Source of the DNA: Octopus bimaculoides
Taxonomy: Eukaryota
Reading direction: 5' to 3'
Assembly (NCBI RefSeq): GCF_001194135.2
Contig: NC_068985.1
Span: 43,557,529 to 43,612,577 of the forward strand
Length of the DNA: 55,049 bases
In this document: positions 12,216-35,300 of the stretch, one piece after another
Position numbering within the stretch: the first letter of the stretch is position 1
Layout: every line of letters begins with the position of its first letter
The notes under the pieces: generated by a model
What the model was told of the DNA's origin: nothing
The model's database searches: none
Seen by the model: only the letters and a program-made list of their open reading frames with translations
Translations under genes and position numbers: made by a program

Positions 12216-12423
12216 TTACACAAACGTAGACATGGCAGATGGTGCAGCAGTCTCCGTTGCTTCCTTCTTGTCCTGGGTGCCATACTGTCCAATGAAGGAG
12301 CCGTCTTCATTGAATTTACTAGGATCAACGTCTCCATAGTCTCCTAAGCTATCGGAATCACTTATTCCACTGGTTTTGTCTCCATTCACTAAGGCTCCAG
12401 GTTTACCAATTCCATTTTCATCA
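12216..12423 (-). CDS. Nrg: Nrg last coding exon DENGIGKPGALVNGDKTSGISDSDSLGDYGDVDPSKFNEDGSFIGQYGTQDKKEATETAAPSAMSTFV*
   Basis: ttgatctttcag acceptor, TAA at 12216-12218; FIGQY ankyrin motif and a class I PDZ-type C-terminus. Confidence 0.97.
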
Positions 12424-15008
12424 CTGAAAGATCAAAAGTTATATTTGAAGAATTAAATGGATATTGAAATAAAGATACAGATTTAGAACAAACTGAGATT
12501 ATTTAAGGGAAAAACATTATGTTCCATAAAAACATTTGCAATTGTAAATCTATGTTTTACAGGCTAAATAGAACGATCTGCTGTCTGCATAAGACTAATG
12601 AAAGCCAGCTATTGTAGTAAAAATACTGATAAAAATTTATAAACAAAGAAATACATGGAAAAAGTAATTAGTTTAAAAAGAAATATATGACATTAGCTAG
12701 TGAAATAATGTAACTATTTTTTCACCAAGTATGAAAAACAAACAAAAGCTCATATTAATGAAAAATGTAATGTTAAATGTAAAAATATTTTTAATAAATA
12801 AAAATGTAGTTTCCTAAATTTCTTCAAGAGAATCAGAAAACAAATTAACACAGTATTAAAACAGCAATGTCTAATATTAAATCAATACTAAAATCTGGAG
12901 TATTGTTTTTATTCTAAAACAATTATTATACTAATAAGCTGATGTTAACAGAAAGAAATACAAGTAACACTACCCAACAGGTATTTTGTTGTCAGGACAT
13001 TTTTATCTGATTTGCAGGTTTTTTGAAATGCTAAATCCCAAAACGGAATCCATGTTTTACCATCTTGTCTAGATTTCAAGATATCCAAATCCCAACTATC
13101 ATCAATGGGTGATAAGCATGAACTTTTATATGGTCAATTTTCTTCTGGAGAAACAAAGTAGATACACCAAATATCCATGCTTTTTATGTATGTGGGACAG
13201 AAAAACATTGGTTGACCAAAGAATGGGTGTAGCGAACATTAGCTCCAAGGTCTTTTAATGTGGCTAAAGAACCTTTTTGTTCAACCAGGAAAAAAATCAT
13301 CCTACCTCCACTCCATATGAAACTGGGCAGAATGAAGCAGTTTGTTAAAGATCTAGATACAGAAGGATGATACTTTCACTATATCTGTAGTACATTTCCC
13401 AGTCTGGGCAGTGAAAAAAATAAAGCTGGCCTCAAATCAGAAAATAGATGACAGATAGGAACTTTGTAAATTCAACGAATTGTATAGAAGCAGCTGTATG
13501 GAATCCATTTGTAATAGGTGTAAATGAATTACTGGGCAACAAGAAAGCAGCCAACTATGCCAAAATAGTCAGCAACAAGCTGTAAATTCCCTGAAAACCT
13601 CAGTAACACAAGTGATGAGCAGGGAGAACATTTCCATCAGGACATAAAACCAATGGGACAAAGGTATCGTGGTAGACTGACTTGCATGTGATGGCAGGCT
13701 ATTGCTGGAACTTGGCTCAAATTCTTCCTAAAGTTTAGTGGTCAAGAAAAATTATCCAAATCCAAATTCATGGGAATTAAAATGATGTAATTTGTCTGTA
13801 AAAATTTAAAGATTTTTACTAGTTTTTCAATAGAATCTTAAGAAAGCATTCTGGTTTTGAAGAAAATACAATTTCTATCTATGTATATATGTTATACCAT
13901 ATTTTTCATAAGCTGTTTTATTGAAAAAACAATGAAATTCTATGGATCAGGTATCTTAAAATCTCAACGTGATGGTAATAAACTGATATCATTTTTTGGA
14001 GTCTGTGAGCCAAAAAACCCATATATATATATACGTACACATATAAACAAACTTTAAATCAGCTCTAATATGTTTGGGACATATTTGAACCTGTAAAAGC
14101 TTTTCACAGCAGTTTGCCATGGAAAAAAATTCTTACTTCAGAGAAAAAGGTTTTGAACACCATAGCCAGCTCAAAACACCCACATGCTAGTACATGGTGC
14201 AAACATTATCTAATATAGATCTCTATTCTTGAAATACAATGGTAATAATATATGATTATCATATCAAAAAGTGACAGTCTACTCAAAACTGAATTTTGTT
14301 AAGAAGCATCTATTATTTATGGGTATCATTTTGAAAGAAGAGTTCTGGTTGATTTAATTTTGTGCATATAGTCTATAATCTACATATGTGTATTTGGATG
14401 GATATAAGTTTGCTTATGCATATGCTGATGTGTTCATACACACACACACACACATATATATGGTTCCTTGCATTGTTGTAGCTTTTGAATGATATCACCC
14501 ACTGACCAGGTGGGCAGGCCAATATATAATTGAGATTCAGTTGAATTAGGTATTTAAGTCGAAGCACCAAGTCAATGCGGTATTGTCCATACAACTCAAA
14601 GTAAGGTGAATAAAATCAAAATAAGCAACAGGATATCAAGAGGTGATGCAGTAGTCTATGATAAAAAAGAATGATAAATTAAAAATGAACCACAATCCGT
14701 TACAAGCTATGACCATAACAAACTTGATACAGTTCTTAGAAGTGTAGTATATTTTGAGCTACATTTGTAGCAACATGGACTTTTTCCCTCTTCTTGCTCT
14801 GTTAGAGAATTTAAGTAAAATTATATTAATGTGTCCAACTGATTAAAAAATTCTATTTATTTATGCAGCTGAGGATAGTCCTGCATTTAAAATGATGTAA
14901 TGATTACATTGTTCAATTAAATGGAGCCGCTTGAAACGGTCGTACTGCATCACCTCTTGATATCCTGTTGCTTATTTTGATTATATATATATTTATATAC
15001 ACACACAT

Positions 15009-15073
<65 letters not shown>

Positions 15074-18000
15074 TATATGTGCCTTGATCCTCATCTTTTC
15101 TCTTTCCATATAAGGAAGTAATATACTCACCTCTTCAGTAAAAATGTTGCACCTATCCTATCATACCAAAACTTTTTGGAAGGCCAAAAGTTTACCCATA
15201 TATAACAAATACTTCATCATTATTGACATCATTATTAGTTGTGACCAGCCACTAGGTAAAACTCAAGCAATTGTTCCTTTTTGATATAATAAACACTCAT
15301 ACACAACAGGCTTGTACACACTTCAAGGCATTACACACACACACACACACATTTATATATGCACATACAACATATTCCTGTTATATCCATTTTATTAATT
15401 TATTTATTTTTTGTTTAACCCTTTACCTGTCCTGCATATCTTAAATGAAACACAAGACATATTTCCTTGGCATACATGTGTCATATATGACACAAATTCT
15501 CAGTTTTTTTTGGTCACCAGAGTAACTTGAGACTTACAAAAGGAAAGTCTTAAATTCCTCAGAACATAAGAAATAAAGGCTAACTAAAAGTCTGAAAAGA
15601 AGCATGAACATTTGGGACAAACTTATGAAAATGCTTTGGATAGGCAAAGGGCTAATACAGCAATGGAAGTTTCTAATTTATCGGAAAGAAGTTGTTACTA
15701 CAGGAAATTGAGCCTAAACTACAACTGTCACTTTCCAACAAAGTGTAATGACTTGGCACAAAGTGGATAATTATAAAATAATAAAAAAATATGATAAATT
15801 AAAAAGAAACAGTTTCAATAAATAGGAACAAGACAAACATTTAAAATCTGTGCACAGTGAAACATTGAAGATTGGAAGGAAGGTGGTAAAAGGTGAAATT
15901 TAAAATGCTATTATTGTTGTCCCACAGAGTTGAAGAAGAGATAAATATTTCCAGCAGTGTATTTAAGTGCAAATGTAATTGTAACCGATGATTAGACCAA
16001 TGATGAGATATGCTTGAAATAGCAGCTACATCTCATTCAAATTAACCGTACCATCTTATAATAAGGACTCATTGGACAGTGTAGTCAGGGATATACTATA
16101 GCTGTAAAATAAATAAAAGATATAGTGATGATGGTTGGAAAGTGTTTGATCATAGGGTTGCTTGATCATGACTGACTTGGAACTTGTTATATCACATGTT
16201 CGGATGACCTCTACTCAACTACCCGACATCTAGACTTCTCCCTCTATATCTACGTATTGGGCTAGCCTACTTCATTGTCTGGGGGCGTCCGACACAACAC
16301 CTCCCCCTTTTGAGTTTTTTTTAAAACCTGAATTTATCAATTTTATTTCCTCATTGAGAAACTGGCATATCTTTTTCTCTTAGCATTAATTTCCATCATT
16401 TCTGTAGGTTTTCTCTTCCTATTCGATCTACGTGTCAGTTCTGCTTTTGCTTGTGGTTCTGGGACCTCAAACAAATCATACCATAAATCCATTGATTCTT
16501 CTCACCTCTCTTGGTTTTTGGTATATCTTTTTTTTAATTGGTTTAAATGCCTTCTGTGTTCATATTTTGGTCCTTTTACCATGTACATCACGTTACCCAG
16601 ACGCCTAGTTATAATTCCTTGTTCCCAGTCCTGTTTTCCGTTACTATATATTTTAAAATACACTTTGTCACCTGTGTTAAAAAATTTCGTTTTTCTTCCC
16701 GAATTTTCTATTTTCTGTTTCCTGCTCGGCAACCATTTGTCAAAAATAGAACGAATATTTCTGGAAAACATCAAATCTGCAGGTGACCTACCCGACTCTG
16801 CATTTGGATTCGGTGTTTATACACCTGCAAAAACTTAGTCATATTTGTATCTTCAAGGATTTCCTGTTTGGTCTTCCTTAAGGCTCTCTTGAATGTGTCG
16901 ATGAATCTTTCTGCTAACCCATTTTACCTTGGATGGTATGGCGGAGTTAACACATGCTTTATCTGAACTGACTTATAGAATCTTTCGAACTCCTTCGCTG
17001 TGAATTGTGTACCATTATTTGACACGATCGTATCTGGCACTCCATACCGAGCGAACAGTTCTTCCAAGAAGTCAATCGTCACACTAGTGGTTGGCCTTGA
17101 ACATTTACACACTTCAGGCCATTTGGAATAGCTATCCACCACAATGATATAATAAGAGCTATTTATTGGTCCTGCAAAATCCACATGTAGTCTGGACCAT
17201 GCTGAATCCGTTTTTGGCCACGGTTGAATCTGCACTGGGGGCGCCTTTGCTGCCATAGCGCATCCCCTACACTGTTTTACCAGTCTCTCAATTTGCTTGT
17301 CCATATTTGGTCAATAAACGTAACTTCTCATAAGGCTCTTCATCCGGACAATCCCTGGATGTCTTACATGAAAGTCTTTTAATACTCTGTTTTGCAGTGC
17401 TTCAGGTATTACCACTCTTTGTGCATATAATAATACCTCATAACATACTGAATAGTGCTTTGAATTTGTGTCCCACTCATTTATATTTTTTGTGTTACTC
17501 AACATTTTAAAAATCTTATTTATGATCCTATCATTTCCCGATTTCAATTTAATTTCTTCCTGCGTTACTGGCAAATCACGTACTACATTGCACAAAATGT
17601 TCTTCAGTTCCATTTCTAGTTTTAACGATGCAATCACTGTGTCTTCAAAAGGTTCCTCATATTTTGGAATTAGCCTAGACAACCCATCTGCGTGTCCCAT
17701 TTTCATTGATAGCAAAAATTCCATCTCGAAATCGTAGTTCAACAGAGTAGTCCCCCAGCACTGTAAGCAGTTTGCTGAGTGCATGGGGATACCCTTTCTC
17801 GAACCAAAAATAGACAATAACGGTCGGTGATCCGTTTGCAGTGTAAACTTCCTCCCATGTAAGAATTTATGGAATTTTTTTACTGTGAAGATAAATGATA
17901 ATGCCTCTTTTTCAATCTGGCTGTAGTTTCTTTCCACTGGTAATAGAGCTCTTGATGCATGTGCAATAGCTTTGATTTTACCATCATTAAATTTATGCAA

Positions 18001-21000
18001 TATCACAGCTCCTATACCATATTCACTGGCATCTGATGCCACAATTATTTTCAGATTTGGGTGAAAATGAGTTAATGATAAATCTGATGTTAACCGCTTT
18101 TTTAGTTCCTCGAATGATTTCTGACGTTCGTTTGTCCAGCTCCATTTTGAGTCCTTCTTTAGCAACTTATTCAACGGAGCTCTTAGCTCATACATTTTAG
18201 GTATGTACAACTGGTAATAACTTACTAAACTTAAAAATGCTTGTAGTGTTGTTTTGTTAGTAGGAGCAGGCATTTTTTTTATCATGTTGATCCTAGAAGG
18301 GTCCGGTTTTTGTCCGTTTTCATCGATCACCTGTCCTAAGTACTTTATTTTTGTCAAGAAAAATTCAAATTAATCCTCCCTTACTTTAAACCCGTAATCA
18401 CATATTCATTTGAAAACCTCTTCTCTATGTTCAATATGTTGGTCCCTTGATTCCCTTTTCATCAATATGTCATCGAAGTATGGGACCGCAAACTCACAAT
18501 CTGCTAGCATAGTATCCATCACTTGCTGAAATATTGCTGGTGTGACCTTTACCCCAAATGGCAGTCTTTTAAAACGGTACAGACCTTTATGAGTATGATT
18601 ATTAATACTTTAGCACATTCTTCATTTACCAGTAATTGGAGTTAGGCCTCTGACAAATCCAGCTTGGAAAAAATGTTCCCGCCACTGCACTTAGCAAATA
18701 TGTTTTCTAGGTTTGGAAGCAGATAATTGTAATTTTTTAAACAATCATCAAGACCAGTGGCTGTGTGAGCTACGAAATCCTTGTCGCCACTGTTATATCG
18801 CATGTTTGGATGACCTCTACTCAACTACCCGACGTCTAGACTTCTCCTTCTATATCTGTGTATTGAGCTAGCCTACTTCATCATCTGGGGGCATCCGACA
18901 CAACAGAACTAAACAACAACAACTTAGAGAGTTAAAAAGAAAAAGCAGTAGCGCACATATTGATATTTAAGTTTAAATTAAAATATAAATATAACAAAAG
19001 CAGCCATAAAAAAAAAAACATAAACTAGAGACAACATATTTTACATATGCTATATAATGTAAATGAACATTATTGGTGGTGGTGATGGTAGTGAAGTGAT
19101 AGTGATAATGATGGTGATGATAAGTGGTATTGGTAGTAGTGGCAATGCCAGCAGTGGTGACAATGATTGGTGGTGGAGCTGGTAACAGTGTTGATGGTGG
19201 TAGTGATGAATAACAGCAACAACAATTAACTTAATATTAAATTCCTATTTTTTAAAAATGAACTAAAAAGTGTAGTATGGCTGAAAATGGTGTGTCATGC
19301 ATAGAATAAAGTAAGGTGAAGTAAGGTTGCGATGGACTTACAAAAACTAAAGAGGAGAGAAAATGGAGAGGCAAGTGCTTAATATAGATTTTACCTTTTT
19401 TTTCTGTAAAGCATTGAAGGAAAAGAAAGAACGAACATGATGACAAAAGAAAACATTGAATGTCTGTTGGTGTGAATACTCTGCCAGTCAAATAGCAAAT
19501 CACATCTTTTTTTAAGGGTATTAACAAAGCAAATATTTAACCCAAAGGGTTAAATATTTGCTTTGTGAGGTTTGTAATTTATTTAATTTATAATAAATAT
19601 TCGAATATTATTTACTGATTAACACTGTAGAGAATAAACACTGCAATTTTATATATTTTCTCAAATAAACATAATACAACAAGAAATACATATGGTAATA
19701 TAAGATATAACATGATAAAGTATTAGGTAGATAAATGTTTCATTTTAACGACAGCAGCTCAAGATTTTAGTGTTTTTATTATAGAATTGGGAGTTAAAGT
19801 TTTTCTTTAAGTAACAATAGCTTGCTACATTGATAAGAGTAAAGGCTTTTTCAGATTTGTAGGAGGGAAAGAAAAATATAATGTTTAACAACATAGGCAC
19901 CCCTAATATTTACCTTACAAAAATACATACCAGTAATATTGGCTTAAATAAAATAGATGCTTGTAATATTAGGTCTAATAAAATAGGTACCTGTGATATT
20001 AGTCTTACATAAATATGTATCTATAACAATGGCCTTAATAAAATAGATACCTGTAATATTAGTTTTAATAAAATAGGTAGCTGTCACATAGGCCTAAATA
20101 AAATAAGTCCCTGTTATAATGGTCTTAATAAAAGAGATACCTGTAATATTAGGGGCAAATTCAATCAGCTGTAATCCTCCCTAAAAAATTGACATTGTAC
20201 TTTGTACAAGAACAAAGATATTAAAATATCATTTTCTTGCTATTTGTGGATTGACGAGATTATTAAAGAAGAACTGTGTCACTGGAGAATATTTATAAAA
20301 GTTATCAGAGAAGATATCTAGTTTGTGACTTACTTTTTACTGTCATTGAGGTGGTCATCAGTACTGTACGGATCATGGCCTCGTAGTCTTTCTTCTTCTT
20401 GCACTGGAGAGGAAAATACATTTTTAAATATGACAGACATATACATCATTGTCTGTGAACACATCATTTTAGAATGTGATATTTTAAAAACACCCATAAA
20501 TATATGCTCTGGTTTAGTCTCTCAGAACCAGAGCACAGTGATGATGTTGATGATGCCTAAGATGATAATGACTACAACATAGTATGGTAAACTATTGTAC
20601 AGATATTTTACAAATAACAAAAATTGCTTAACTAATTCTTTTTACTATGGCTAAAACTATAACAATTCAGTTTACTTAGAAACACGTTTCTATCAAGTAA
20701 TTAAATCTTCCTCTTCACAACTCAAAATGATATCCTTAATGAATTGCTAAATGTATGTTAGTCTATGACAGCATGGGTTTGATAGGTCTGTTTTATTGTT
20801 TTTAACCATCAATCTATTACTTGTCATTCTTCAATAACCTATAATCTCTCAAATAGTCACCCTTGTCTTATTTACACTATCACTTTACATAGAGTCCACA
20901 TTGATTAGCCAACACAATGGTTATATATAGAATAATGAATTATTATCCTTAATTACAAGTATTTATAAAACAAGAATCCAATGAAATATGGTTAATTAGT

Positions 21001-32324: not shown

Positions 32325-35300
32325 CAACAATAAAAATAATATGAGTATCCTTTGTGATCATAATATTGCAACAAAAGAATTTGACAAGCTCAGAAAACAT
32401 AAGATTTGCTCATTGAAATAGAAAAAAAATATATGGCATCTCAAGGCAGTTATAATACCAGTGATTGTAGATGTGCCAGGAATGATCAAAAAAGGAACTG
32501 AAAATTATTTGAGAATGATCCCTACCTTACCATCTGTGCAAGAATTGAAAAAGATTATTTTAACTGGTATGTCACACATTGAGAAGAGCATTGTCAATGT
32601 GCGAATGATAAGTTTTTATGTAAATAATTTATTTTTCTTCATAACTTCATTTGATTTTGTAAACGAACAATCTGATGTGTTTATTTTAATGGCCTATCAA
32701 TGTATACAGTGAGTTTCTTTGCTCTAGGTGTTGAAAAGATACTTGGCAAGAAATGCAAACAAAATTGAAGGAAAAAAGTACCCGATATCTCCTAGAGCTG
32801 GTGATTTAATTTACAGTAAATTAAATCACCTGTTCCAGGAGATATCAAGTACTTATTTTTTTTACTGATGTTGGAGACAAGCTTAAATACAGTAGTATAT
32901 GAATTTAAACTGTAGAGAATGAAATTAAATGCTTTGATGCCCTCTACTGGTCATATATATTATATGAATTAGTGAATGTGCATCTCTTGATTTGTGCCTC
33001 TATACACTTACTTCCTGCATCTGTGGTCCATACATCAATATAATATGGTTCTCCTTCACCAGCACTGGTCATTGCTTGAATCTGTATCCGATAGTTTGTA
33101 CTGGCTTCCAAACCACGTAGTATATACTCTGTCATTGTTGGATCAGTAGTTGGTTCATCTTCAAATTGTACTGGAGATACTTTCAAACCATTAACTGCAG
33201 AAGACATTTTAAAGCAATATATCTCTTAAGTACTTTCTCTAACATAATTAACAATTGTATTTTTGAAATTTTGATAATTATAAATTTAATTTCATTGAAT
33301 GAAAATATTTTACAGATAATATTTATATCTAAGAAAACTTACTCCTTTGGAATCCAATATTATAGCCAATTAACAAACCATTCCTTTCTTCTGGGGGTTC
33401 CCACTTTAAGTGGAAGTGACCAGATCCTCTAACTAAGGCCATAAAATAATGAACTCTGCCAGGAGCTGTATAAAGAAAATAATAGGACAGTAACAAATAT
33501 ATAAAATACCTTCATTGTAATTATAAATTCATTTTGAACTGATAAAAGGAGAACAGTTTTGCAAGGACTGGAAATAGTCAAGAGATTCCTCCTTAGTGTA
33601 TTATTAGAAGTTATTTTATTGATCATGTAAGGATGAAAGATAAGCTTTTAGGGTAGTATCAACAGATTTTTGTGTAGTATCTACAACTAAGGCAAGACTA
33701 ATACCTCAGATTTCAGATAACAAAATCTCAGAAAAATAGCAAAGGATATGCCTCTTATTAGACTGTGCAAAAATGCAAATATTTCACTAAAATGTGGATA
33801 TTATCAACCATTTCCAGCATTTTTCTCAAAATGACATTTCTGACTGTGAGTAGCAATCTATAGGTCATGATATCTCTGAGAATAATTGATGTATTGCACA
33901 TGTATTGCTTTGATACTTGTCTAGATGCTGTTCTAGTGTGATTAGATACGCTTCATTTGTTCATCTTCCAGAGACACTTGAATGCTACTACCCAGGGGTC
34001 AAAAATGCTCGAACTGCTGCATATGGTTATGAGCAACCCCACAACGAAATCTAGGACAACTTCATCAATGTCTTTAATTCAGCATCTAGTCTGTACCCCA
34101 ATCTGTTGGCATTCCAAATTAGAGCACATTATCTTTGATAGTTTGGTAGAAAAATCAACCTAAAATAAGAGTATGTTTGCCTTATCGGTCATTTTGAATT
34201 TATAATTAGGTCATGAATAGATAATGTGGAAACTTGAATATTATGATTTTTGATAGAACTGACATTGTTCTTGATGTATGCCATATTTGGTTTGCCTGGG
34301 CTTTATTCCCACTGAGTGAGGGCATCTTCAATTTAGGAGTGTTTTCCTATGTCTGAAGTGTTAGTCTTGCCTTAACTTTAGTATTCCTAGATTAGCTTTT
34401 AGAGTAGTATCCATAATCTTGTACAGTAGTATCTATTGTGAGGTGGTAGTTTGCAATCTACATCCTACAGATGCAAACATTTATTTTAATGATTGAAGAA
34501 CAGATAGGTTTATACAAAAAAATTGAATACATTGAAAGTATAACTCTGCACCATTTATTGTTAACTATCCACATCAGTGGTTCTAAACTTGTGGGTGGCA
34601 AGGACAAAATCTTATTTTAGAAACATAAAACAACTGTTTAATCTATATTAAGCAAGGCTGAGTTTCAATATGTTTTCTATCAACTTAATTCAACTGACCT
34701 CCCTCAGGTGTCTGGACATCAATGACATTGCTCTCGGGGCCTTCATAATATGTGTTGCGTGCTACCACTGACAAGCTAAAGTTTGAATAAGCAGGGAGCA
34801 TTACGTTGGCTTTCACTTTAGATGATGTTCTACGATGTCGACTTCTCCGTGTTGAACGGCGATTATGTGTATTTTCAGAAACATCAATTTTCTTTAAAGT
34901 TGTTTCTTTCTCACCAGGTTTCCAGAAAAGAATCTAGAATCAAAACAAAATTTAATAGATGCATTGTTATGCTTGAATTAGAATATCAATATCTAAGCTA
35001 TTAATAAACCATTACAGTTATTTCATTCATTTGACATTCATTTTTCCATGCTAGTATGGACAGGAATTGATTTTGAGGCAGTATTTCACAACTGAATGCT
35101 CTTCTTGTTGCAAATTTTCACCAGGTTCTGGGTAATGGATTTTTATATTCCAAAGTTGTTTGAAAGTGCCGAGCAACTGATTGTAATGTTGTCAACAAGG
35201 AATTTCAACATCAGTATCATTTTGCTCACATGATGTTAACCAAAATATTAGCCTTCACTCCCACAACCCACCCCACCACAAAAAAGCAGAATTACTACAG

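What the first reader, a model, noticed from the sequence alone, without database searches (positions are those of the whole stretch)
19342..19346. 5-nt microexon candidate that would switch off ankyrin and PDZ binding
Seen: a 27-nt near-pure pyrimidine tract, then AG|TTTTT|GTAAGT. Inclusion shifts the frame to ...NDSKNFLMKMELVNLEP* with the TAG at 12389-12391, inside the last exon. Known: a stop in the last exon escapes junction-dependent NMD; FIGQY binds ankyrin. Inference: a stable isoform lacking FIGQY and STFV. Only 48 nt separate it from the 9-nt candidate, which suggests sterically enforced mutual exclusivity, giving a three-state tail switch (skip, KKKS, truncated).
Basis: partly seen in the sequence, partly recalled or inferred. 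Interest (0 to 1): 0.72.

Follow-up and report, generated by a model that had tools for sequence, protein, structure and literature searches.

The report
Splice-site look-alike beside a real microexon
The sequence looks exactly as described, but nothing shows that the five bases are ever spliced into the message; it more likely belongs to the control region of a real 9-base microexon 48 bases upstream in an L1-type adhesion gene.

Summary
Observation confirmed. On the minus strand, a 19/20 pyrimidine tract plus AG (19373-19347) is followed by TTTTT (19346-19342) and GTAAGT (19341-19336). Inclusion would give ...DSKNFLMKMELVNLEP* with the TAG at 12391-12389. The 9-nt candidate lies 48 nt upstream.

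Both splice signals are as strong as, or stronger than, the confirmed ones of this gene. Such a composite is expected 0.11-0.23 times per window by chance, and looser versions occur 8-18 times.

New context: a spliced RNA contig from a related species (L001) carries an A-rich insert at exactly this exon junction. The neighbouring 9-nt microexon (19403-19395) is therefore real. L001 carries no TTTTT.

The candidate sits in that microexon's downstream flank, beside the only sense-strand TGCATG of the 7.9-kb intron.

No RNA-seq and no genome of a close relative could be reached. The protein database cannot register a 5-nt isoform, so inclusion is untested.

Against a real exon: it breaks the frame, 5 nt is extreme, and there is no transcript or conservation evidence.

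- Best reading (about 0.4): an unspliced pseudo-exon acting as a regulatory module for the 9-nt microexon.
- No function: about 0.3.
- Real 5-nt exon: about 0.1.
- Alternative donor giving a 62-nt exon: about 0.1.

The parts
19342..19346 (-). The 5-nt candidate TTTTT, lying between an AG and a GT
   Evidence: Read directly. Inclusion gives ...DSKNFLMKMELVNLEP*. No transcript evidence was found.
19347..19373 (-). Acceptor-like element tgcctctccattttctctcctctttAG: a CU-rich tract, 19/20 pyrimidines before the AG
   Evidence: It is stronger than all five confirmed acceptors of this gene (13-16/20). It contains UCUCU, UUCU and CUUU motifs.
19336..19341 (-). Donor-like GTAAGT (TTT|GTAAGT), a full 6/6 match to the intronic donor consensus
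   Evidence: It has the same intronic hexamer as the real donors at 33011, 21473 and 20333.
19395..19403 (-). Genuine A-rich microexon AAAAAAAAG (9 nt; replaces N with KKKS). Its donor AAG|GTAAAA is weak.
   Evidence: The spliced RNA contig L001 from a related species has AAAAAAAAAG inserted exactly between the two flanking exons. The donor matches 4/6.
19404..19450 (-). Long pyrimidine-rich acceptor region of the 9-nt microexon, with TGC 8-10 nt before the AG (caaTGCtttacAG)
19347..19394 (-). The 48-nt interval between the microexon's donor and the candidate's AG. It is too short to be removed as an intron.
   Evidence: Coordinates. That it is too short is inferred from established minimal donor-to-branch-point distances.
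19296..19301 (-). TGCATG (Rbfox-type motif): 94 nt downstream of the microexon's donor and 35 nt downstream of the candidate's donor
   Evidence: It is the only sense-strand TGCATG in intron 12424-20333. TGCATG is the one motif enriched downstream of alternatively spliced micro-exons (PMC4317164).
20334..20403 (-). Upstream cytoplasmic exon (..VQEEERLRGHDPYSTDDHLNDSK, ends AAAAA|gtaagt)
   Evidence: Aligned to L001 positions 548-618
12216..12423 (-). Last coding exon (DENGIGKP...FNEDGSFIGQYG...STFV*). It starts TGATGA. The TAG of the +2 frame is at 12391-12389.
   Evidence: Pfam Bravo_FIGEY E = 1.6e-16.

Best explanation
The AG|TTTTT|GTAAGT arrangement is a pseudo-exon: splice-site look-alikes that are rarely or never joined into mRNA. 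It lies inside the downstream regulatory flank of a genuine 9-nt A-rich microexon (19403-19395) in the cytoplasmic tail of an L1/neuroglian-type adhesion gene.

Proposed mechanism (inferred, not shown):
- The microexon is tiny and has a weak donor (AAG|GUAAAA).
- A perfect U1-complementary GUAAGU lies 62 nt downstream of the microexon's acceptor AG. That spans a unit long enough for exon definition.
- The CU-rich tract 22-46 nt downstream is a binding platform for PTB-type pyrimidine-tract proteins.
- The UGCAUG at +94 is an Rbfox-type enhancer.
- Together these set how often the 9-nt exon is included. The decoy acceptor may also engage the microexon's donor non-productively, because 48 nt is too short to splice.

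Shown here: the sequence anatomy, the reality of the neighbouring microexon, and the strength and position of the motifs. Inferred: protein and snRNP binding, and the direction of the effect.
For: 1. The neighbouring microexon is real. L001, a spliced RNA contig from a related species, has an A-rich insert exactly at this exon-exon junction.
2. The candidate lies +49 to +59 nt from that microexon's donor. This is the zone where downstream intronic splicing elements act.
3. The microexon's donor matches only 4/6, while the downstream GTAAGT matches 6/6.
4. The tract is 19/20 pyrimidines, stronger than any confirmed acceptor here.
5. The only sense-strand TGCATG of the 7.9-kb intron is 35 nt further downstream. 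TGCATG is the single motif enriched downstream of alternative micro-exons (PMC4317164).
6. There are precedents. A decoy 3' splice site with a U/C-rich PTB region in the intron downstream of an alternative exon regulates that exon (caspase-2 In100, PMC2082412). PTBP1 bound downstream activates exons with suboptimal donors by helping U1 dock (PMC5716086).
7. The composite is unique in the window. Its position next to a real microexon is much less likely by chance than its mere existence.
Against: - No conservation data are available: no genome of a close relative was reachable.
- About 600 nt here are generally pyrimidine-rich on the sense strand (60-72%), so a CU tract could be compositional.
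- The composite motif is expected 0.1-0.2 times per window by chance.
- The strict In100 definition is not met: there is no UAAC, and the acceptor is TAG rather than CAG.
- No significant RNA structure links the elements (z = 0.09).
- The other mollusc locus, L002, shows no comparable microexon or pseudo-exon in the homologous intron.
- No binding or splicing assay exists.
Confidence: 0.4

Rival explanations
1. A chance pseudo-exon with no function. A pyrimidine-rich stretch of intron happens to end in AG and is followed by a GTAAGT. It is neither spliced nor regulatory.
For: - Simulations expect 0.11-0.23 such composites per window, with P(at least 1) = 0.10-0.19.
- There are 8-18 looser pseudo-microexons in the window.
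- About 11 non-exonic GTAAGT sites and about 8 non-exonic strong polyY-AG sites lie on this strand.
- The surrounding 600 nt are pyrimidine-rich.
Against: - It lies on the sense strand within 50 nt of a real microexon and 35 nt from the intron's only sense TGCATG. The joint placement is improbable by chance. My rough product is about 1e-4: roughly 0.025 for GTAAGT, 0.05 for a strong polyY-AG and 0.06 for TGCATG within 120 nt.
- The acceptor tract is stronger than every confirmed acceptor.
Confidence: 0.3
2. TTTTT is a real 5-nt cassette exon, mutually exclusive with the 9-nt exon. Its inclusion shifts the frame and yields a stable membrane-anchored isoform ending ...NFLMKMELVNLEP, without the ankyrin-binding (FIGQY) and PDZ-binding (STFV) motifs.
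For: - Both splice signals are excellent: 19/20 pyrimidines plus TAG, and GTAAGT 6/6, comparable to real donors such as AAA|GTAAGT and ATG|GTAAGT.
- A TGCATG lies 35 nt downstream.
- The frameshift stop lies in the last exon.
- The neighbouring microexon is real, so this intron is under microexon-type control.
- 48 nt would indeed forbid joint inclusion.
- Absence from the database is uninformative, because such an isoform yields no complete ORF that the database could hold (reasoning).
Against: - There is no transcript evidence. The only spliced contig lacks it.
- 5 nt is not a multiple of 3, unlike typical regulated microexons.
- Described microexons span 3-27 nt (PMC13174390), and exons of 51 nt or less already suffer steric hindrance (PMC4317164).
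- With AG and GT 5 nt apart, acceptor-bound and donor-bound factors would have to sit almost on top of each other.
- The UGC is 25-27 nt upstream of the AG, before the pyrimidine tract. In the 9-nt exon it lies next to the AG.
- No conservation could be shown.
Confidence: 0.1
3. GTAAGT at 19341 is an alternative, stronger donor for the 9-nt exon. It would give a 62-nt exon (19403-19342) that carries an in-frame TAA (...DSKKKKR*). This would be an unproductive or truncating isoform that tunes expression.
For: - 62 nt is a normal, definable exon size.
- The distal donor (6/6) is stronger than the proximal one (4/6).
- The translation ends at ...KKKKR*.
Against: - There is no transcript evidence.
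- L001 uses the proximal donor.
- The stop would lie upstream of the last junction, so the product might be degraded. Whether that rule applies in molluscs is unknown.
Confidence: 0.1

Closest known systems
RSLE mini-exon (12 nt) of vertebrate L1CAM, and the related tails of NrCAM and neurofascin
   Same: It is a tiny neuron-specific cassette in the cytoplasmic tail of an L1-family adhesion molecule, between the juxtamembrane region and the FIGQY ankyrin site (RSLE and FIGQY: PMC2173803). By my recalled alignment of the human L1CAM tail, the intron holding the 9-nt and 5-nt candidates sits within about one residue of the RSLE insertion point. That alignment is from memory and was not tested here.
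   Different: RSLE is 12 nt and in frame, and it adds a sorting motif. The 5-nt candidate would break the frame and delete the whole distal tail. Only the 9-nt neighbour resembles RSLE in kind.
Caspase-2 In100 element (decoy 3' splice site plus PTB-binding U/C-rich region)
   Same: It is an intronic element downstream of an alternative exon. It contains an acceptor look-alike that is not used and pyrimidine-rich sequence, and it acts by non-productive engagement of the upstream exon's donor (PMC2082412).
   Different: The In100 definition needs UAAC, then 5-10 nt, then (Py)n-CAG, then a 20-60 nt U/C-rich stretch. Here there is no UAAC, the acceptor is TAG, and a consensus donor follows at once. 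In100 represses its exon. The sign of the effect here is unknown.
Calcitonin/CGRP intron enhancer (Lou, Gagel and Berget 1996; listed among the references of PMC2874999)
   Same: As I recall it, a pyrimidine tract with an acceptor-like end sits directly next to a consensus 5' splice site. This zero-length pseudo-exon binds PTB and U1 and promotes processing of the upstream exon without being spliced itself.
   Different: That element activates polyadenylation of a terminal exon. Here the upstream unit is an internal microexon. The architecture is quoted from memory, because the primary paper was not held.
RBFOX- and PTBP1-regulated neural micro-exons (for example c-src N1)
   Same: A very short exon is flanked by pyrimidine-rich sequence, with UGCAUG downstream (PMC4317164). 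PTBP1 bound downstream helps U1 dock at weak donors (PMC5716086).
   Different: Those data are from vertebrates. No binding data exist for this organism.
Sterically enforced mutually exclusive exons (alpha-tropomyosin exons 2 and 3; from memory)
   Same: A donor-to-acceptor distance too short to splice (48 nt here) would prevent two neighbouring exons from being joined to each other.
   Different: In tropomyosin both exons are documented. Here only one of the pair has any transcript support.

Membership tests
Cassette microexon (3-27 nt, regulated) | Flanked by a functional-looking acceptor (polyY-AG) and donor (GT) | tested here: met
   19/20 pyrimidines + TAG, and TTT|GTAAGT with 6/6 intronic match
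Cassette microexon (3-27 nt, regulated) | Found in spliced transcripts | tested here: inconclusive
   The only spliced contig (L001, a related species) lacks it. The database cannot register such an isoform, and no RNA-seq was accessible.
Cassette microexon (3-27 nt, regulated) | Length preserves the reading frame (typical of regulated microexons) | tested here: not met
   5 nt gives a +2 shift and a stop after 13 new residues
Cassette microexon (3-27 nt, regulated) | Exon and flanking intron conserved across related species | not testable with these tools
   No genome of a close relative was found in any collection
Cassette microexon (3-27 nt, regulated) | UGC motif close to the acceptor AG (SRRM4/eMIC-type microexons; feature recalled from memory) | tested here: inconclusive
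   For the candidate, TGC lies 25-27 nt upstream of the AG, before the tract. For the 9-nt exon it lies 8-10 nt upstream.
In100-like decoy 3' splice site element | Lies in the intron downstream of an alternatively used exon | tested here: met
   It lies 48 nt downstream of the transcript-supported 9-nt exon
In100-like decoy 3' splice site element | UAAC, then 5-10 nt, then (Py)n-CAG, then 20-60 nt U/C-rich (definition in PMC2082412) | tested here: not met
   There is no TAAC upstream and the acceptor is TAG, not CAG. The downstream 60 nt are Y-rich but begin with GTAAGT.
In100-like decoy 3' splice site element | PTB binding and repression of the upstream exon | not testable with these tools
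   Needs binding and minigene assays
Sterically enforced mutually exclusive exon pair | Both exons are documented alternatives | tested here: not met
   Only the 9-nt exon has transcript support
Sterically enforced mutually exclusive exon pair | Donor-to-acceptor distance too short for splicing | tested here: met
   48 nt, 19394-19347
L1/neuroglian family adhesion molecule (host gene) | Cytoplasmic Bravo_FIGEY domain with FIGQY after a single transmembrane segment | tested here: met
   PF13882 E = 1.6e-16, 61.6 bits against a cut-off of 23.8. Homologues are named neurofascin/L1/NrCAM C-terminal. The truncated 5-nt isoform loses the match.
Recursive splice site | AG immediately followed by GTAAGT, so that a donor is rebuilt after the first step | tested here: not met
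   Five T's separate the AG from the GT. The junction AAAAA|TTTTTG rebuilds no GT.

The most novel reading that the evidence does not exclude
TTTTT is a genuine 5-nt exon, mutually exclusive with the 9-nt exon because only 48 nt separate them. The L1-type tail would then have three states: plain, +KKKS, and truncated without the ankyrin and PDZ sites. A frameshifting microexon would be acting as a deliberate off-switch for cytoskeletal coupling.
Probability: 0.07. Interest if true: 0.7.

Novelty: new member of a known kind. Interest (0 to 1): 0.3.

Why it matters
If the 5-nt exon were real, it would be one of the shortest functional exons known. It would also be a rare case of a frameshifting microexon used to remove the ankyrin and PDZ anchoring of an L1-type adhesion molecule.

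If my reading is right, the value is more modest. It would be an invertebrate example of a strong unspliced pseudo-exon that helps define or restrain a 9-nt microexon. That bears on how spliceosomes recognise exons too short for normal exon definition.

The A-rich microexon next door has transcript support. It also appears to sit at the position of the vertebrate RSLE mini-exon, although that alignment is from memory.

Tried and rejected
**Searches for transcripts or related genomes that found nothing useful**
- Transcript or isoform evidence through the 5.8-billion-protein database with the spliced tail. Only one hit from a close relative, P0001/L001. No full-length L1-type proteins from close relatives are held.
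- Exact look-ups of the window's own ORFs: the 57-aa last-exon ORF and the 91-aa intron ORF spanning both candidates. Not on record.
- A six-frame pseudo-protein of 19232-19700, to catch spurious ORFs on related genomic contigs. Nothing at E of 10 or less.
- The retrotransposon ORF, used to identify the species. The best hits are 56-68% identical. No close relative is in the database, so the organism was not identified.
- Metagenome scans with the exon-donor pattern (no hits) and with the FNEDGSFIGQYG coding pattern. The second gave 7 contigs, all 69% identical or less, from other invertebrates.
- The Dreissena locus look-up. Not on record.

**Checks on the sequence itself, all negative**
- The homologous intron of another mollusc, L002. 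Exon structure and junction nucleotides are the same, but no comparable microexon or pseudo-exon was found.
- Repeat or transposon origin of 19150-19600. Not repeated in the window.
- Duplication of the upstream exon end. The alignment score is no better than shuffles.
- RNA structure pairing the two candidates. There is a 9-bp complementarity, but z = 0.09.
- An alternative terminal exon starting at 19346. No AATAAA or ATTAAA lies within 1 kb.
- Recursive splicing. Rejected because the AG and GT are not adjacent.
Full report
**1. The observation**

Everything below is read on the minus strand.
- The window has tgcctctccattttctctcctctttAG, ending at 19347, then TTTTT (19346-19342), then GTAAGT (19341-19336).
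- The upstream coding exon is 20403-20334 and ends GACAGTAAAAA|gtaagt.
- The last coding exon starts at 12423 (ctttcag|TGATGAAAATGG). It runs through FNEDGSFIGQYG to STFV and the TAA at 12218-12216.

I translated the spliced variants by script.

| Variant | Tail |
|---|---|
| Skip | ...HLNDSKNDENGIGKP...FIGQYG...STFV* |
| 9-nt insert (19403-19395, AAAAAAAAG) | ...DSKKKKSDENG... |
| TTTTT insert | ...DSKNFLMKMELVNLEP*, TAG at 12391-12389 |

The interval between the 9-nt donor and the candidate's AG is 48 nt.

**2. The host gene**

The spliced tail matches Pfam Bravo_FIGEY (PF13882, E = 1.6e-16). The 5-nt isoform loses that match.

Database relatives are L1/neurofascin/NrCAM-type tails from molluscs, for example Dreissena polymorpha at 53% identity.

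A spliced RNA contig from a related species (L001, Logan assembly of SRR25158151) is 74-84% identical in nucleotides over the five most 3' exons (68% over the sixth). It confirms the six most 3' exons and their GT-AG borders in the window.

I could not identify the organism, and no close relative is in any reachable collection.

**3. The key piece of context**

L001 carries AAAAAAAAAG (positions 619-628) between the exon that ends ...AGTAAGAA and the last exon that starts TGATGAAAAC.
- The 5-nt candidate sits 48 nt inside that microexon's downstream intron.
- L001 has no TTTTT.

Two caveats apply.
- L001 is one contig.
- It is visible in the protein database only because its frame is broken. 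The insert is 10 nt there, in a run of 11 A's, which creates the complete internal ORF P0001. In-frame contigs give ORFs cut by the contig end, and these are not searchable. The 209-aa product of L001 itself was not returned.

A 5-nt isoform would generate no complete ORF in the tail frame, so the database cannot register it. Absence is not evidence.

**4. Strength of the signals**

| Site | Acceptor: pyrimidines in the 20 nt before AG | Donor: match to intronic GTAAGT |
|---|---|---|
| 5-nt candidate | 19/20 | 6/6 (TTT\|GTAAGT) |
| Five confirmed acceptors, including the 9-nt exon | 13-16/20 | not applicable |
| Real donors of this gene, e.g. AAA\|GTAAGT, ATG\|GTAAGT | not applicable | 6/6 |
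| 9-nt exon donor (AAG\|GTAAAA) | not applicable | 4/6 |

By sequence alone the candidate sites are as good as or better than real ones.

**5. Chance**

- The strict composite (at least 17/20 Y, AG, 1-30 nt, GTAAGT) occurs once on both strands.
- Markov models of order 1, 3 and 5 expect 0.11, 0.11 and 0.23 per window, with P(at least 1) about 0.10-0.19.
- Looser definitions give 8 and 18 sites.
- The minus strand holds 22 GTAAGT sites, about half of them real donors, and 12 strong polyY-AG sites. Four of the latter come from a SINE-like repeat.

Existence alone is not significant. Position is another matter. The composite is on the sense strand, within 50 nt of a real microexon. The only sense-strand TGCATG of the 7.9-kb intron is 35 nt further on, at 19301-19296. 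With background rates, a GTAAGT, a strong polyY-AG and a TGCATG all falling within 120 nt downstream of a given exon is of the order of 1e-4. This estimate is rough, made after the fact, and the region is pyrimidine-rich.

**6. What it most likely is**

The region 19394-19290 looks like the downstream control region of the 9-nt microexon.

From the literature:
- TGCATG is the single motif over-represented downstream of alternatively spliced micro-exons. Pyrimidine-rich motifs and PTBP1 regulate them. Exons of 51 nt or less are prone to skipping, probably through steric hindrance (PMC4317164).
- PTBP1 bound downstream can activate exons with suboptimal donors by helping U1 dock (PMC5716086).
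- A decoy acceptor with a U/C-rich region downstream of an alternative exon regulates that exon through non-productive contacts with its donor (caspase-2 In100, PMC2082412).

In this window:
- The consensus GUAAGU lies 62 nt from the microexon's acceptor, beyond the roughly 50-nt limit for exon definition.
- The decoy acceptor lies 48 nt from its donor, too close to splice.

I therefore commit to an unspliced pseudo-exon acting as a U1 and pyrimidine-tract-protein platform that sets inclusion of the 9-nt exon (confidence 0.4). Binding and the sign of the effect are inferred. Nothing here shows them.

**7. Rivals**

- **Pure chance (0.3).** Supported by section 5.
- **Real 5-nt exon (0.1).** For it: strong sites, the nearby TGCATG, a stop in the last exon, and a database that cannot see it. 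Against it: the frameshift, the extreme size (described microexons span 3-27 nt, PMC13174390), an AG and GT only 5 nt apart, no transcript, and no conservation.
- **Alternative distal donor giving a 62-nt exon ending ...KKKKR* (0.1)**.
- **Rejected.** Recursive splice site (AG and GT not adjacent); alternative terminal exon (no poly(A) signal within 1 kb); repeat or duplication origin; RNA structure (z = 0.09).

**8. The secondary claims**

- *Mutual exclusivity.* A 48-nt interval would indeed prevent joining the two exons. This follows from established minimal donor-to-branch-point distances and is an inference. It is moot unless the 5-nt exon exists.
- *Escape from decay.* The stop lies in the last coding exon, and no junction downstream is known. 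The junction-dependent rule comes from vertebrates, and whether it applies here is unknown.
- *FIGQY and ankyrin.* The link is documented (PMC2173803).
- *STFV as a PDZ ligand.* It fits the class I pattern, from my own knowledge.

**9. Comparison with what is known, and novelty**

The 9-nt neighbour resembles the vertebrate RSLE mini-exon in kind. By my recalled alignment it also matches in position, but this was not tested here. The 5-nt candidate resembles no documented L1-family isoform.

As a regulatory pseudo-exon it would be a new member of a known kind. It fails the strict In100 sequence definition (no UAAC; TAG rather than CAG).

Interest is 0.3. The striking reading is possible but improbable, and it can be settled cheaply with junction k-mer counts.

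Noticed in passing
window 19395-19403 (-), with 20334-20338 (-): The 9-nt microexon AAAAAAAAG has transcript support from a related species. Spliced to the upstream exon's terminal AAAAA, it creates a run of 13 A's that exists only in the mRNA (..AGT-A13-GTGATG..), encoding KKKK. Poly(A) runs in ORFs are reported to cause ribosome stalling and frameshifting (PMC7295572).
   Followed up: partly
L001 617-631: In the related species' RNA contig the insert is 10 nt, not 9, within a run of 11 A's. As assembled, the main frame ends ...HFNDSKKKKK* at a TGA formed by the first bases of the last exon. This is either homopolymer slippage or mis-assembly, or a genuinely truncating microexon. The contig is visible in the database only because the frame is broken.
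   Followed up: partly
window 12418-12423 (-); L002 about 10068: The last exon begins TGATGA (TGGTGA in the other mollusc). Any upstream insertion of 3n+1 nt therefore terminates at once. The junction nucleotides AAAAA|GTAAGT ... CAG|TG are shared with a distant mollusc locus.
   Followed up: partly
window 19296-19301 (-): The only sense-strand TGCATG (Rbfox-type motif) in the 7.9-kb last intron. It lies 94 nt downstream of the 9-nt microexon's donor.
   Followed up: yes
window 19524-19566: A perfect 20-bp hairpin with a 3-nt loop (CAAAGCAAATATTTAACCC-TTT-GGGTTAAATATTTGCTTTG). MFE is -26.5 kcal/mol and z = -7.0. It lies about 120 nt upstream of the microexon and is not repeated elsewhere in the window.
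   Followed up: partly
window 16502-18824 (-): A degraded LTR-retrotransposon (reverse transcriptase, RNase H and integrase ORFs; K02A2.6-like relatives at 56-68% identity). It lies in the sense orientation inside the same intron. The homologous intron of L002 also carries a reverse-transcriptase element.
   Followed up: partly
window 50739, 45749, 31639, 27716 (-): A SINE-like repeat (caactttgcctttcatcctttcag|GrTCrATAA) supplies four strong acceptor look-alikes in introns of this gene.
   Followed up: no
window 19070-19225 (-): A CAC/CAT-rich, microsatellite-like stretch just downstream of the candidate. It contributes to a pyrimidine-rich island of about 600 nt on the sense strand.
   Followed up: no
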